Positions 11 through 62,800 of a stretch of DNA of 64,000 bases are shown here, piece by piece (position 1 is the first letter of the stretch; every line of letters starts with the position of its first letter). Source of the stretch: Saccostrea echinata (taxonomy: Eukaryota); the NCBI RefSeq assembly GCF_033153115.1, contig NW_026889750.1:9300001-9364000 (forward strand), written 5' to 3'. The notes beneath the pieces were generated by a model. That model saw only the letters and a program-made list of their open reading frames with translations. It was not told the origin of the DNA and did no database searches. Position numbers and translations under genes: made by a program.

Positions 11-2398
11 TTAAATACACTGACAAACATAACCATTGAGAATATTACAAGGGATGTCGTTCAACCAAAATATTCCGTCCTTTAAGCGAAGTTCTATGCA
101 ATCTTCGTTTTTAAGGTCGTTAGGTTCTCCTGCAGAGAATATAAAATATTAAAAGAAATAGTTTTAAGAATAAGATAGACAAAAAGAAATAAATAGGAAG
201 ACTTTGAAATATATAATGCATTTTAAAACTATGTAGATTACATGATCAGTAGGTACTGGTCCCAGCTGACAAAGCGGGTAACAACATTGTCTTTGTTTGT
301 AAGGCTCATTACAAAGGAACTAGGATTTAATTTTGGAAGTGGAAATCCAGCTTATATTCATAGCTCCCTTTCTAAGGAAGAAATTCTTCAAATAATTTGT
401 TAGTTCTAAATATTTTTAATATTCGCAACAAACAAAATGAATTTGAACTACCATATCTATACTGGATTCCTAAGCTTCATAAAAATCCTTACAAACAAAG
501 ATATAAAGCGTTTTCCAGTAAATGTTCTACCAAACCTCTTTCGTTACTCCTCACTAAAATATTAACAGCAGAGAAGGAGAAACTTGAGGAGTACTTTACA
601 ACAATATATTCGAGAAGTGGTCTAAATCAGATGTGGATACTCAAAATTTCCAAGGAACTTTTAGAAAATTTAAAATTTAACCAAAATCAATAACATTAAC
701 ACGTATGACTTTTCAACACTTTATATATACAACAATGCCCCACGAAAATTTAAACTTCAGGCTTTTTAACATCATTGACAGCTGCTATTGCAATAAAAAT
801 GGAACTCGTTAATTTACTTGCCGTGTCATTGGTCATTTGCAAAATTACTTTGTTAAAAACACTCCGATTGTACACACAAGTACTCTGAAGTTGATATTAA
901 AAAATGCTTGAGATTTTGATTGACAAAATCTATGTAATTTTTGGAGACCAGGTCTTCCGACAATCTATCGGAATTCCCATGGGTACCAATTCCGCTCCAT
1001 TGTTAGCTGATCTATTTTTGTATTCAAATGAAGCAGAATTTATTCAAGAAGTTTACATGTGAAAAAGAAAACACTTGCTGTGGCCTTCAACTCGATATTT
1101 AGATATATCGACGACGTATTATCAATTAACAATAGTTACTTTCATTCATATGTCGACTCGATATATCCCAGTGAAATTGAAATAAAAGATACCACAGAGT
1201 CTGACACTTCTGTTTCACATTAGGATATTTTACTAGAATAGACGTTAATGGTAACCTAACAATAAAGCTTTATAATAAACCTGATGACTTCAACTTTTTA
1301 ATCGTCAGCTTTCCTTATGTAGCAATATACCCTTATCACCTGCATATGGGGTTTATGTCTCTCAGGTGATTTGATACGCGATAGCATGAACAAATTGTTC
1401 ATCTAAGGACACATCTCTTCCCCAGCTTGCTTTAACTGGACAACAGAACAAATATCATTTTTAATCATCCGTCTTCCTTCACTAAAACAATCATTCCAAT
1501 TAATGATTGAACGTCTGGCAAGTCCTTTATCTTCATAAACCTTGTACTAATTAGTATATGCTACTGCAAAGGAATTTCCAAGATACACATTTTAAGCAAT
1601 GAATCATTATTTTTTGAAAGATATAGTCTCATAACTGCAACGGTGTGTGCAAACAAATTGAGTAACGCGCGTTAGCGCGTTATGAAAATTTGTTTGCACA
1701 CACCGTTGCAGTTATGAGACTATATCTTTCAAAAAATAATGATTCACTGCTTATATTTACATTTTTTAACTCCTTGCCTTGACTGCAAATGTGATTTATA
1801 TTTAAAAATCCCTTTATTATCCTTCAAGTAAGTAACAGTTAATGGAAGAGCCAATGCAACAGCGTCTGTTCAATGTGAGCGTGATTTTTGATTTCGCTTA
1901 TGACGTTGCACTTTCACGGCGTTCAACGTTTGTGACGTCAAAATAAAACGCATGCTTTAACCTTTTGACTCCCTGTCCGTGTTATGGTATTTTGAATGCC
2001 ATAGATTTCCACACATTTTATAATACAGAGAGTCTTGTCAAAATTAACGATGCAATATAAGCCAATATTCGTTTATGTGATTTATTTTAACACATGCTAT
2101 ACTTACTAATAATGAAGGTGTAATCTTCATCAAAGCGTTCAATCGCTAAAGTTGCACCGAAATTTTTACACCTCTTATCTGCCTCAGACATGGTAACTTT
2201 CTCATTTTCAAATAAATAAGCAAGTTCGTTGTCTTGTCGAATCTCCCAACGGCATAATATTGAAGGGATGGAAAACCAAATTTCTTTAAATATAAGTGGA
2301 AATTTATTGAAAGACGTGAAAAGAGAGAGAGATAAAGAGAGAGAAGACAGAAAGAGAGGATACGTACCAAATGCTATTAATAGCCTCCAGTGTTTCAT
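11..2398 (-). CDS. C-type lectin domain gene (signal peptide + CTLD with EPN motif); middle exon not found
   Basis: GT-AG exons: 2398-2368 (MKHWRLLIAF), 2283-2107 (IWFSIPSILCRWEIRQDNELAYLFENEKVTMSEADKRCKNFGATLA...) and 129-~11 (EPNDLKNEDCIELRLKDGIFWLNDIPCNILNGYVCQ). The WID..NWAPG exon seen in the paralogue (14902-14796) was not found. The 3' end is ambiguous: TAA at 11-13 or a splice donor at 18. Confidence 0.75.
250..1390 (+). mobile_element. Degenerate Penelope-like retroelement RT (Naiad-like), in the lectin intron
   Basis: Frameshifted translation gives VLVPADKAGNN, LPYLYWIPKLHKNPYK, YDFSTLY, GIPMGTNSAPLLADLFLY, FRYIDD and SNIPLSPAYGVYVSQ, with many stops. Confidence 0.85.
1593..2061. 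mobile_element. 161-bp palindrome element P1 (hairpin 1593-1753 plus tail)
   Basis: Near-perfect arms TAAGCAATGAATC...GATTCACTGCTTA with apex TAACGCGC-GTTA-GCGCGTTA. Followed by TATTTACAT; distal inverted motif ATGCAATATAAG at 2050-2061. Confidence 0.7.
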
Positions 2399-3129
2399 TT
2401 CTTTTTTCTTTTTTATTTTGACATATGAAATCCACAAGCATCAATTTTACGTAATGAAAATTAGGATAATGGAACCTCCGAGTAGCCAATACAGGTATAT
2501 TTATCTGATCAACGATATTTTGGCATTATTTCAACATTAACGTCAACTGTTTTACAATTTAATCAATATGATATCAATAAATCCTGAAGTCACATTGATT
2601 AAAAAGTCCTGATATTCTAGATGGTATTTTGCCCATGCTATGGTAATAAATGAATCACTGTACATGAATAACTTGTAGGATAGTCAAATGCAACATCCTT
2701 ACTTATATTTTAAGTTTTTTTTCTTACTATGACTTTTCGTTAGAGTGCAAAATGGAGAACTAATCAGAAATCTGATGGTTATTGTAAACATTGAATTCCA
2801 TTTACTATAATTGTGGTCTTTATTATTTTTTTCTGTGAACACAAAGAATTTATTTGAAGTGACTCTGTCTCCCGACAAGAAATCAAAGATATTGGCTTCT
2901 TTGAAATCCGCCCTCCCTCATCGTGTGTGTCATATAATCATGTGTGAGGGTATGTGAGGGGAGGGGATGTGTTTGTATTTGTATGTAGCATTCTCTGTTT
3001 ATAATTTACACATGGGCATTTTTGATTGATATTTAATGAAAGACGTTTAGTTTCATTTTTTCTTTTATCAGAGAACAACTGTGTATTTAAAACACGCATG
3101 CAATTATTTTGTAACGTTTCCATCATACA

Positions 3130-59756: not shown

Positions 59757-59827
<71 letters not shown>

Positions 59828-62800
59828 TGACATCCTGCAAAAACACCCAGCTATAACAGGGTGTTCGAGAACTAATTTTTTAGAAGATATTATAAATAAA
59901 GTTCATAAGCAGTGCATTTTGTGATTTATATGAATCGGTAAACAAATGAAAAGATTAATATAGAAAATGTAATGAACATATATTACTGTTACGACTGAGT
60001 ATATACCACGAACAAGGCTGCTTAGAGTTTTAATAAAAATCATCTGAGTAATCGGTTACTCAATCGGAAAAGTAAGCGAGTACCCGGTTACTAAAAATCG
60101 TCCAATTTGACAACACTAGTTAGCAAGTAAAATAACAAATGGGATTCGCTTATAATTACCAGTATTTTTTAAAATGATTAATCATTTGTTTCAGTGCTGT
60201 TTTTTCAGTACATTATATATATATTATATGGTGCAATCATGTAAACATTTTATTTGTTAAAATTTACACCAGATTGCCATGTAAAATACCAGTAATCTAT
60301 ATGAAGATCTTTAGTTTGTTTGTCAGGAATTAAAAAAAAAGAATTAAACAAAATGACATGACAGATAAATACTGAGAAATACTTTTAAACTTTTAAGGTG
60401 AATTTTCCTAAATGTTGAAACAATTATCCTTAGGCCAGTAAAGTTGTACATGGTATTTTTATATTTATCGCTTTAGTTATCATAAATTCCATTAAATTCA
60501 AACAATTTATTATATAACAATTTATAATATATAAGTTTTATCATATAGTATGTGCATGATCATTTTATTCACTGCATATAAATACTTGTATAAAGAATGG
60601 TTAGAGGAAAACGGGTTGATTTTGATATATCTTGTGCAGAGGTCATTATAAGGCCAAACTTTTGTACATTTAATAATTATTGAATGTATGATGAATTATT
60701 ACTTCAGATATTTTTCATTCTAAAAAAAAATACATCTTCTTCAAAAACATGTACAATGAGTGGATGAAGACACCTATAAATTCTGAGGCCATTGAAAGTC
60801 AAGGTCAAAATTATTTGTTTAATTTTCCCATTTCTGTGTGAAAAATTGAGAATTACTAGTATTCATTATGTGAACTAAATTTTACTATACAATTAACTAA
60901 GACACCTTACTGTAACACATACTTTTAAGAGTTTGCCAAAGGTCAAGTGCAAAAGGTCAAAACTAACAAATAAACATATATTTTCTAGTTCCCAAAAGAT
61001 CTGATAGACTTGTGTGTATGCAATTGCTACAACATTATGATACATGTATTGAATTTTCTGTCATTTCAATCATTTTTTCATGTTCTTGCTTCATTAGAAT
61101 TTTNNNNNNNNNNNNNNNNNNNNNNNNNNNNNNNNNNNNNNNNNNNNNNNNNNNNNNNNNNNNNNNNNNNNNNNNNNNNNNNNNNNNNNNNNNNNNNNNN
61201 NNNNNNNNNNNNNNNNNNNNNNNNNNNNNNNNNNNNNNNNNNNNNNNNNNNNNNNNNNNNNNNNNNNNNNNNNNNATTTAAATTCATCTCACTAATTAAA
61301 TTTAACATTAAAAATGTAATCCATCATTTATTTGAAACAGGTGAAGAAATTAAAGTATACAAGAGTTTAGACCAAGCTAGAGATGGCAGGGATGCCCTTG
61401 CTAAACACATGTATGAGAGACTGTTTGGATGGATTGTGAAGAAAATCAACAACAACCTGCATCCTCGCAAAAAAGAGTAAAATATTTAATGTATTAAAAA
61501 GTGGATGGGAAAAAAGTGTTTCTATTATGCCCTTTGCTTATCAGCCAATGGGAAGGGAAGAACAGACGATTTGTATATTTCATTTGATGTACTAATCAAA
61601 TTTTCCAACTTCCCACTTGATTTTTTTGTAACTCAGTTTTTCTTGTAAATTTTACTGGAGTTTTGTTGAATATAAAGAAAAATCATCTTGGAAAAGACCC
61701 ATATAATCTTTTATCATTATTTACTGCACCAGTCATATTAATAAAATAAAAAACACACAAACACACATAATAACATCAGAGTACTATACAAATTCAAATT
61801 CTCAGCTAATATTGCATGGATCTCCCATTAGAAAGAATAACTCCTTGGCACCTACTCCACATAAGATTTATATTTAAGGAATAACTGTCTAATTTTTTGG
61901 ATTCATGATGTGATCAATCGAGTGGCTTGCGTGATAATTTGCATAAACGCCGAAGGCGTTTATGCATAAAATTATCACGCAAGCCAATCGATTGATCATC
62001 GTCATGAATCCAAAAAATCTGACAGTTATTCCTTATATTTACATGCTCCTGATTCTGCAAATTCCCATGCTAATGGCCCCGCTTCTGTCTCTATTTGTCC
62101 CGCCCCGCACGTGATTTTTTTTAACCGCGCCTACCGATGAACCAGTAGATTTATGTAGAAATAAAGTATTTTTACAATTTGTAATTTTATCTCGGACAAA
62201 GACATTGGAAATGTAAATATAACTGTGTAAAAAGAAAATATTGGTGAAAGGTTGGGTATTCAAGGTGTTCATTGATCTTGTTCAAGCTCCACAAGATATT
62301 CTGTGGCCAAGAAGGCACTCTAATTCTGTTTATTTCATCCCATGTACGCTGAATAGGATTGAGTTGAGGACTGCGCGCAGGGCAGCATTAGTTGGTGGTT
62401 CTGACTTTTGGAGAAGTTGTTTTATCCTGCTTAAGGAGCAATCCATGAATGTGAGGGTCATTAGGTGGAGTACAATATTCTGATACCATGTACCTCACAT
62501 CGTTCAAGTTCTGATGGAATGGAACAATCTGAGTTTTTATGTTGCAATGAAATACCCACTTGAACCATGAGAAAACCACCTCCAAACTGTCCACATTCCC
62601 TCACATATGTATTTAAATTGTGTACTGGTAATTAATGCTTACCCTTCTCCAACAGACACAAGACCATGCAACCATTCATATATAAAACCTGAACTCATCT
62701 GTATAAAGAACTTGACCCCTATCTGCACAAGTTACAAGAATTTATTTTAATCCAGTTTGGGCCCCCAGAGGAACAACAAAGATTTTCAAACAAAAAACAC

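What the first reader, a model, noticed from the sequence alone, without database searches (positions are those of the whole stretch)
1593..62222. Three sequence-unrelated ~161-bp palindromes with a shared architecture: candidate structure-defined, tyrosine-recombinase-type mobile elements
Seen: P1 (1593-1753) and P3 (61875-62035) are both 161 bp, and P2 (12833-12997) is ~165 bp. Their arms are unrelated, yet all begin TAAG, have a small asymmetric internal loop before an 8-11 bp apical stem, and close with a cGTTAg or cGAAg loop. P1 and P3 end CTTA followed by TATTTACAT (degenerate in P2). An inverted copy, ATGTAAATATAA-like, lies 190-310 bp downstream (2050, ~13195, 62211). Joining the right end to the left end (GTAAATA+TAAG) recreates the exact complement of the internal junction CTTATATTTAC. 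Established: cGNAg and cGNNAg are exceptionally stable ssDNA mini-hairpin loops; internal regions complementary to both termini, short terminal direct repeats and no classical TSD occur in tyrosine-recombinase elements (DIRS internal complementary region; Cryptons). Inference: a non-autonomous element class in which fold and length, not sequence, are conserved, possibly moving through a circular or ssDNA/hairpin intermediate.
Basis: partly seen in the sequence, partly recalled or inferred. Interest (0 to 1): 0.8.

Follow-up and report, generated by a model that had tools for sequence, protein, structure and literature searches.

The report
Rolling-circle-type transposons with giant hairpins
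The three palindromes are the end hairpins of short, very abundant non-coding transposons built like Helentron (rolling-circle) elements; what is unusual is that the hairpin is about 160 bases long and stayed perfectly paired while its sequence drifted.

Summary
The palindromes are real and far beyond chance. Each is the 3' module of a short non-autonomous transposon on the window's minus strand: 5'-ATATTTACAT(T) … body … ATGTAAATAT-AAG[157-167-nt hairpin]CTT-AA-3'. At least nine families share this plan. The 13-mer ATGTAAATATAAG occurs 4,635 times in the genome against 271 for a reversed control, and 1,731 against 2 when CTTAA must follow 150-160 nt later.

There is no target-site duplication. 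Head-to-tail copies abut exactly, CTTAA|ATATTTACAT. The bodies are unrelated between families.

The hairpin arms are not unrelated. They are diverged homologues (55-64% identity) with 19-24 base pairs changed on both sides per family pair and none changed on one side. Inserted copies, in contrast, decay mostly one-sidedly.

This is the published architecture of Helentron/Helitron2 (HLE2) non-autonomous elements: short inverted repeats plus a stem-loop after the right repeat. The genome holds at least 285 Helitron-type Rep loci. The tyrosine-recombinase reading is not supported.

The scan had noted Helentrons elsewhere in this genome, but the notes I saw do not describe this long-hairpin lineage.

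Verdict: a new variant of a known kind, of moderate interest.

The parts
1592..2058 (-). Family F1 copy (467 bp). 3' end CTTAA = 1592-1596 on the + strand. Hairpin AAG...CTT = 1594-1752 (159 nt). 3' subterminal repeat = 1753-1762. Degenerate 5' repeat = 2050-2058.
   Evidence: The family consensus is 459 bp. This window copy matches the family from 1591 to 2023, and its first ~35 nt are a diverged variant.
12832..13205 (-). Family F2 copy (374 bp). Hairpin = 12834-12997. Degenerate 3' subterminal repeat = 12998-13006. 5' repeat = 13195-13205, with one inserted base.
   Evidence: The consensus is 366 bp and other copies are 86-91% identical to this one.
16870..17059 (-). Partial copy of a further family (F6, as in L035/L040). 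5' repeat = 17050-17059. Short body. Diverged subterminal repeat near 16976-16986. The remaining hairpin is 16873-16960 and runs into the assembly gap at 16721-16869.
   Evidence: the junction-like hit at C1:9317049-9317064.
45845..46268 (-). F1/F8-like copy that has lost the hairpin arm next to the subterminal repeat. 3' subterminal repeat = 45929-45938. Loop and one arm = about 45862-45922. 5' repeat = 46259-46268. The body holds a T-rich simple repeat.
   Evidence: The 3' end coordinate is approximate.
61874..62220 (-). Family F3 copy (347 bp, young). 3' end CTTAA = 61874-61878 on the + strand. Hairpin = 61876-62034 (159 nt). 3' subterminal repeat = 62035-62044. Body = 62045-62210. 5' repeat = 62211-62220.
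   Evidence: copies 0.3-0.6% from consensus; fold; read contigs end at 61871-61874 and at 62220-62221.

Best explanation
The palindromes are the 3'-terminal stem-loops of short non-autonomous rolling-circle transposons of the Helentron/Helitron2 (HLE2, 'HINE') type, read on the window's minus strand.

Layout: a 10-11-nt left repeat at the very 5' end (ATATTTACAT(T)); a family-specific body of 170-290 bp; the inverted right repeat (ATGTAAATAT); then directly a 157-167-nt hairpin (AAG...CTT) and two terminal A.

Likely mechanism (inferred from the Helraiser model, not shown here):
1. A Helentron RepHel protein supplied in trans nicks the 5' end.
2. It unwinds the element strand 5' to 3'.
3. It is halted and guided by the 3' hairpin.
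4. It cleaves after CTTAA and joins the ends into a circle that reinserts without a target duplication.

In the displaced strand the two repeats pair and stack on the hairpin, so the 5' and 3' ends lie side by side.

Only lineages that keep the stem paired keep transposing. The stem therefore evolves by compensated changes, while inserted copies decay freely.
For: Shown here:
1. The same termini occur in all families, while the bodies are unrelated.
2. Ends are sharp and there is no TSD. This rests on three paralogous or nested empty sites, two of them T|T, flanks of 53 independent insertions, and contigs of four public runs that cover only 61866-62243 with loose ends at 62220/62221 and 61871-61874.
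3. Precise head-to-tail junctions reading right-arm end + CTTAA|ATATTTACATT occur at about 20 places in five families. There is also a dimer in L076.
4. Enrichment: 4,635 motif copies against 271 for the control, and 1,731 against 2 with CTTAA 150-160 nt on.
5. Consensus hairpins are 100% Watson-Crick. Between families 19-24 pairs are changed on both sides and 0 on one side. Four paired positions vary together in public runs. Within inserted copies there are 73 broken and 16 wobble pairs against 4 compensated.
6. The single-strand fold pairs nt 1-11 with the subterminal repeat, directly beside the hairpin.
7. The genome has at least 285 Helitron_like_N loci, many with 2,500-2,900-aa open frames. 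Relatives of one of them carry Rep + OTU + PIF1 + APE endonuclease and the Helentron-diagnostic GSPH motif.

Published definitions:
- HLE2 elements have short TIRs, a stem-loop after the right TIR and a T|T target (PMC11417382).
- HINE features (PMC4067079).
- In Helraiser a swapped stem keeps about 90% activity, whereas loop changes do not (PMC4778049).
Against: - No autonomous element carrying these ends was found. Of 150 listed Rep places, none has one of the ~500 element places I saw within 15 kb in the right orientation.
- The one Helentron I could read (L080) ends in a different 22-bp-stem palindrome.
- The T|T rule is not strict. The base before the element is A in 27 and T in 22 of 53 insertions; the base after it is A in 29 and T in 17.
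- The repeats are 10-11 nt, at or just below the published 11-18 nt.
- The hairpin is roughly 3-10 times longer than any described for this class.
- Orientation relative to a transposase gene is unknown, so a 'reverse' HLE2 layout is not excluded.
Confidence: 0.8

Rival explanations
1. A different, so far undescribed single-strand or HUH-type transposon class mobilises these elements. It would be unrelated to Helentron RepHel and would merely converge on the layout of a repeat plus a terminal hairpin. It might replicate by hairpin self-priming, as parvovirus ends do.
For: - No Helentron partner with these ends was found.
- The hairpin sits 2 nt from the 3' end and is far longer than any HLE2 stem-loop.
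- The apical loop of family F4 occurs in both orientations, GAA and TTC.
Against: - Every structural feature apart from hairpin length fits HLE2.
- The genome is full of Helentron RepHel genes.
- Small loop inversions are an ordinary mutation of hairpins.
- Within each family tested the loop orientation is fixed.
Confidence: 0.1
2. One reading: non-autonomous tyrosine-recombinase elements (Crypton- or DIRS-like). The internal junction would mirror the joined termini, and movement would be by circle integration.
For: - There is no TSD.
- The internal sequence ATGTAAATAT-AAG is complementary to both termini.
- A circular intermediate is compatible with exact head-to-tail junctions.
Against: - The complementarity is fully explained by a TIR plus the hairpin base.
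- Most real junctions (CTTAA|ATATTT) carry two extra A relative to the internal junction.
- There are no terminal direct repeats or shared target core at the ends.
- DIRS elements are retroelements several kb long, with split repeats.
- No tyrosine-recombinase link was seen. I ran no genome search for such genes.
Confidence: 0.03
3. A foldback-type MITE of a cut-and-paste (DDE) transposon family.
For: Short, AT-rich, high-copy and palindrome-rich, with 10-nt inverted repeats.
Against: - There is no TSD at three empty sites or in 53 flank pairs.
- The right repeat is about 165 nt inside the element, so the ends are not symmetric.
- Exact head-to-tail tandems are frequent.
Confidence: 0.03

Closest known systems
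HINE / DINE-1-type non-autonomous Helentrons (Thomas et al. 2014, PMC4067079) and Cg_HINE of the Pacific oyster (PMC7492417)
   Same: - A short left repeat at or near the 5' end, and its inverted copy subterminal at the 3' side, followed by a palindrome.
- No TSD and AT/T-rich targets.
- High copy number.
- Families share termini but not bodies.
- Tandem copies occur.
- The host is an oyster relative (best RepHel hits are Magallana gigas at 79-80%).
   Different: - Described palindromes have 5-10-bp stems, and the whole Cg_HINE right flank is about 60 bp. Here the hairpin is 157-167 nt with 71-75 pairs.
- There is no central satellite array or 5' microsatellite in the families studied.
- The repeats are 10-11 nt rather than 11-15 nt.
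- The partner has not been identified.
HLE2 (Helitron2/Helentron) as defined for HELIANO (PMC11417382)
   Same: Short terminal inverted repeats, a stem-loop after the right repeat, and insertion without duplication (T|T at two of three empty sites, one of them cleanly supported).
   Different: - The T|T rule is only partly met.
- The stem-loop is far larger than expected there.
- Its search window for TIRs (longer than 11 and shorter than 18 nt) would miss or barely catch these repeats.
Helraiser / canonical Helitron (HLE1; PMC4778049, PMC5876387)
   Same: - A 3' hairpin acting as a terminator.
- Stem sequence that is exchangeable while the apical part matters.
- Circle and tandem junctions of exact ends.
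   Different: HLE1 has 5'-TC and CTRR-3' ends, an A|T target, a 19-bp palindrome 11 nt from the end, and no inverted repeats.
IS200/IS605 and IS91 families (bacterial HUH transposons; from general knowledge)
   Same: Single-strand transposition guided by DNA hairpins, with no TSD.
   Different: They are prokaryotic. IS200/IS605 elements have small hairpins at both ends. No relation was shown here.

Membership tests
HLE2 / Helentron non-autonomous element (HINE) | Short inverted repeats: left one terminal, right one subterminal (published range 11-18 nt) | tested here: met
   ATATTTACAT(T) and (A)ATGTAAATAT, 10-11 nt, occur in all families. This is at the lower edge of the published range.
HLE2 / Helentron non-autonomous element (HINE) | [quoted passage not shown] | tested here: met
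   The hairpin starts directly after the right repeat and ends 2 nt before the element end. Its size (157-167 nt) is far outside described values.
HLE2 / Helentron non-autonomous element (HINE) | No target-site duplication | tested here: met
   Three paralogous or nested empty sites, and no repeated flank in 53 insertions.
HLE2 / Helentron non-autonomous element (HINE) | Insertion between T and T | tested here: inconclusive
   T|T at the clean nested site in L078 and at L033, but A|C or A|A at L010. In the flanks, position -1 is A 27 / T 22, +1 is A 29 / T 17, and +2 is T 44 of 53.
HLE2 / Helentron non-autonomous element (HINE) | An autonomous RepHel (with or without APE endonuclease) element with the same termini | tested here: inconclusive
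Comparing coordinates gave no match. L080 has other ends.
HLE2 / Helentron non-autonomous element (HINE) | DINE-1/Cg_HINE extras: a short inverted repeat beside the 5' repeat, a microsatellite and central tandem repeats | tested here: inconclusive
   Small 4-6-bp hairpins are possible within the first 25 nt. There is no central array in F1-F3. One window copy has a T-rich simple repeat.
Canonical Helitron (HLE1) | 5'-TC ... CTRR-3' ends and an A|T target | tested here: not met
   The ends are 5'-ATATTT and CTTAA-3'.
Crypton / DIRS (tyrosine-recombinase elements) | Joined termini identical to an internal or target core; a recombinase-encoding master copy | tested here: not met
   Most real junctions, CTTAA|ATATTTACAT, differ from the internal junction by two A. 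The ends share no direct repeat. I did not search the genome for a recombinase gene.
DDE MITE / foldback element | Inverted repeats at both extreme ends plus a fixed-length TSD | tested here: not met
   The right repeat lies about 165 nt inside the element, and there is no TSD.

The most novel reading that the evidence does not exclude
The giant hairpin is not just an oversized Helentron terminator. It may mark a distinct mobilisation mode, either through an enzyme other than the known RepHel or through parvovirus-like self-priming from the near-terminal 3' hairpin. The paired repeats would act as a built-in splint that holds both ends together, and the fixed length of about 160 nt would be measured by the machinery.
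Probability: 0.1. Interest if true: 0.8.

Novelty: new variant of a known kind. Interest (0 to 1): 0.42.

Why it matters
- It gives a natural covariation experiment on a DNA, not RNA, secondary structure. There are dozens of fully compensated stem changes across at least nine families, against one-sided decay in dead copies. That argues that an intact 3' hairpin of a set length is needed for rolling-circle-type transposition in an animal.
- It shows which parts are free (most of the stem sequence and the body) and which are kept (the base AAG/CTT, a T-run, the apical stem). This parallels the Helraiser stem and loop swaps.
- These elements probably escape Helitron annotators that are tuned to short stem-loops and TIRs longer than 11 nt.
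- About 160-nt perfect palindromes present in thousands of copies are likely sites of deletion, and perhaps of assembly breaks. One window copy has lost an arm, and another abuts a gap.

Tried and rejected
1. Autonomous partner:
- I fetched one RepHel locus (L080). It has other ends.
- A metagenome scan with a Helentron alignment returned mostly microbial PIF1 helicases.
- tblastn of the L080 RepHel against the window and the 79 loci found nothing.
- A hand comparison of 150 Rep places with about 500 element places found nothing convincing.

2. Empty alleles from public reads: the runs hold only the repeat, not this locus.

3. L002/L017 empty site: the paralogues are too diverged (70-80% identity) to place the cut.

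4. Flip/flop of whole palindromes: the loop orientation is fixed within F1-F3. Only a small apical inversion was seen in F4.

5. In-place repair of the arms: rejected, because old copies decay one-sidedly.

6. Rfam: no family matches anywhere in the window.

7. The motif hit at window 15027 is not a copy.

8. Earlier scan notes gave no termini or places that I could use.
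Full report
**What is in the window**

On the + strand each starts TAAG and ends CTTA. 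Each is followed by TATTTACAT, and an inverted copy of that motif lies 190-310 bp further on.

Folded as single-stranded DNA, the family consensus hairpins have 71-75 Watson-Crick pairs and no other pair types. They have 11-17 unpaired bases and an energy of -75 to -86 kcal/mol. The whole F3 copy folds at -91 kcal/mol, z = -15 against 100 dinucleotide shuffles.

No element contains or crosses an assembly gap, and I filled none.

**They are repeats with sharp ends**

Each palindrome plus its downstream segment is one unit of a high-copy family.

| Family | First-look candidates in the 923-Mb genome | Identity of the scored copies to the query copy | Consensus length |
|---|---|---|---|
| F1 | 1,183 | 90-96% | 459 bp |
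| F2 | 1,821 | 86-91% | 366 bp |
| F3 | 1,411 | 97-99% | 347 bp |
| F4 (found in a flank) | 1,469 | 88-93% | not determined |

Consensus sequences built from 20-30 copies each, together with the flanks, show one plan on the window's minus strand: 5'-ATATTTACAT(T) ... body ... ATGTAAATAT-AAG[hairpin]CTT-AA-3'. Similarity stops abruptly at both ends.

Contigs of four public runs from three coded organisms cover only 61866-62243. Their loose ends pile up at 62220/62221 and at 61871-61874. This confirms the ends independently.

The window holds five copies:
- F1 at 1592-2058.
- F2 at 12832-13205.
- A partial F6 copy at 16870-17059, which runs into the gap at 16721-16869.
- An F1/F8-like copy that has lost one hairpin arm, at about 45845-46268.
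- F3 at 61874-62220.

**Enrichment and length**

| Pattern in the genome | Matches | Reversed control |
|---|---|---|
| ATGTAAATATAAG | 4,635 | 271 |
| ... followed by CTTAA after 150-160 nt | 1,731 | 2 |
| ... after 120-149 nt | 829 | 12 |
| ... after 161-190 nt | 510 | 16 |

The 120-149 class is largely an internal CTTAA of family F7 plus deleted copies. About half of the 161-190 class is F7 at exactly 161 nt.

The printed matches reveal at least nine or ten families: F1, F2, F2b, F3, F4, F7, F8, F9, F10 and F12. Their hairpins are 157-167 nt long.

**What is shared and what is not**

- The bodies are not significantly similar between families. The exception is a weak match between the first ~65 nt of F2 and F3.
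- The hairpins are not unrelated. Left arms of F1-F4 align at 55-64% identity. Five of the six pairs score z = 3.5-6.3 with 0 of 500 shuffles as good; F1-F3 is weaker (z = 2.3, 9 of 500).
- The hairpins share the AAG/CTT base, a T-run near positions 16-23, and an apical CATAAnGCSC stem closed by a 3-4-nt loop.
- In the public runs the termini (the hairpin and the first ~58 nt) are 10-100 times deeper than the F3 body. That fits many families sharing ends but not bodies.

**Structure is maintained in the transposing lineage only**

- Between family consensus sequences, 19-24 of 63-70 aligned pairs differ on both sides and none differs on one side.
- In the public runs, variant letters occur at paired positions with similar shares:
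  - 61898/62012 (T·A to C·G)
  - 61900/62010 (G·C to A·T)
  - 61901/62009 (A·T to T·A)
  - 61930/61979 (C·G to T·A)
- Individual inserted copies differ from their family consensus by 73 broken pairs and 16 G·T wobbles, against only 4 compensated pairs.
- In F2 the hairpin has diverged as much as the body, 4.0% against 3.7%.

There is therefore no in-place repair of the arms. The pairing is kept because only copies with an intact stem go on to multiply.

**Insertion and junctions**

- Three paralogous or nested empty sites show that the inserted segment is exactly ATATTTACAT...CTTAA, with no duplication.
- The clean case is a copy nested in an F1 body (L078). It lies between T and T. L033 is also T|T. 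L010 lies in an A-run next to C.
- Over 53 independent insertions, the base before the element is A 27 / T 22. The bases after it are A 29 / T 17, then T 44, then A-rich. The target is AT-rich with a 3' preference for (A/T)TAAA, and T|T is not strict.
- Head-to-tail copies are common. About 20 places in F1, F2b, F3, F4 and F7 read right-arm end + CTTAA|ATATTTACATT with no spacer. Two places have one A fewer, and four or five have T in place of the last A.
- One dimer was read in full in L076. Tandem pairs also appear in the F4 hit list.

**Fold of the element strand**

In F3 and F1 the minimum-energy fold pairs the first 9-11 nt with the subterminal repeat. That repeat abuts the hairpin base, so the 5' end and the 3' end (with one to two unpaired A) lie next to each other on a continuous complementary strand.

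It follows from repeat + hairpin. Most real junctions carry two extra A.

**Classification**

[quoted passage not shown] Thomas et al. describe the non-autonomous HINEs in the same terms, with 5-10-bp palindromes. In the Pacific oyster the whole right flank is about 60 bp.

The genome has at least 285 Helitron_like_N matches, many in open frames of 2,500-2,900 aa. The one I could read (L080) has relatives with Rep, OTU, PIF1 helicase and APE-type endonuclease domains. The closest are from Magallana gigas at 79-80%. The alignment shows the GSPH signature that Thomas et al. give as diagnostic for Helentrons.

I therefore file the elements as HLE2-type non-autonomous elements. The layout test is met. 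The T|T test is only partly met. The partner test is open.

Canonical Helitron ends, a DDE TIR + TSD layout and the tyrosine-recombinase features are not met.

**What I could not do**

- The metagenome scan gave mostly microbial helicases.

Comparing 150 Rep places with about 500 element places by hand gave no element 3' module downstream of a Rep gene on the same strand. The only near neighbour is C1:40820673, which has the wrong orientation. L080 ends in a different 22-bp-stem palindrome about 190 nt after its stop codon.

The sampling was about 10% of element copies, so this absence is weak evidence. Orientation relative to a transposase gene, and hence canonical versus 'reverse' HLE2, remains open.

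**Mechanism**

- Shown: the anatomy, the copy number, the exact ends, no TSD, exact tandem junctions, and covariation restricted to the propagating lineage.
- Inferred from Helraiser work: a RepHel nicks the 5' end and unwinds 5' to 3'. The hairpin halts it and marks the 3' cleavage site, and the ends are joined into a circle. In Helraiser a swapped stem keeps about 90% activity whereas changing the loop does not. This parallels the free stem and conserved apex seen here.
- Why the stem is about 160 nt, and what sets its length, is unexplained.

**Verdict**

- The 'mobile element with a conserved fold' reading is right.
- The tyrosine-recombinase reading is not supported.
- This is a new variant of a known kind: Helentron-type elements with a giant, length-conserved, compensatorily evolving 3' hairpin.
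- Earlier notes of this scan mention Helentrons elsewhere in the genome. None that I could see describes this lineage.

Noticed in passing
L032:2995-3158 versus G000:C1:19394081 (printed match): Two copies of family F4 carry the apical loop in opposite orientation, GAA against TTC, while the nearby bulge stays on the same arm. This is a small inversion of the apical stem-loop, of the kind that hairpins or cruciforms generate.
   Followed up: partly
window 16721-16869 (gap) and 16870-17059: A long-palindrome element runs straight into an assembly gap. Such perfect palindromes may be a cause of assembly breaks. The other three gaps show no such element at their edges.
   Followed up: partly
window ~45845-46268: A copy in which exactly one hairpin arm is deleted up to the loop. 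This is the typical outcome of palindrome instability. Its body carries a long T-rich simple repeat and a run of 12 G.
   Followed up: no
window 37332-37415, 40544-40645, 37963-38043: Three other compact palindromes of 84, 102 and 81 nt (98%, 86% and 79% paired). They lack the subterminal-repeat motif in the right place and probably belong to other repeat families. The one at 40600-40645 contains ATATTTACAT inside an arm.
   Followed up: no
F1 body (window ~1900-1945) and F4 body (L032 ~3300-3350): Both bodies contain CRE-like TGACGTCA motifs and a shared AACGTTTGTGACG / CACAAACGTT segment in opposite orientation, although the bodies are otherwise unrelated.
   Followed up: no
L080 (G000:C25:26305000-26314999, minus strand): Part (2,182 aa held here) of an open 2,906-aa Helentron RepHel frame. 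It has a 22-bp-stem palindrome about 190 nt after the stop codon. Rep loci cluster on a few contigs (C5, C6, C25, C33, C36), while the hairpin elements are dispersed.
   Followed up: partly
3' flanks of 53 insertions (loci L001-L079): The flank after CTTAA has a graded preference for (A/T)-T-A-A-A, with T at +2 in 83% of insertions. This resembles the complement of the element's own 5' end and might reflect target recognition by base pairing.
   Followed up: no
It has no connection with the elements and I did not examine it.
   Followed up: no
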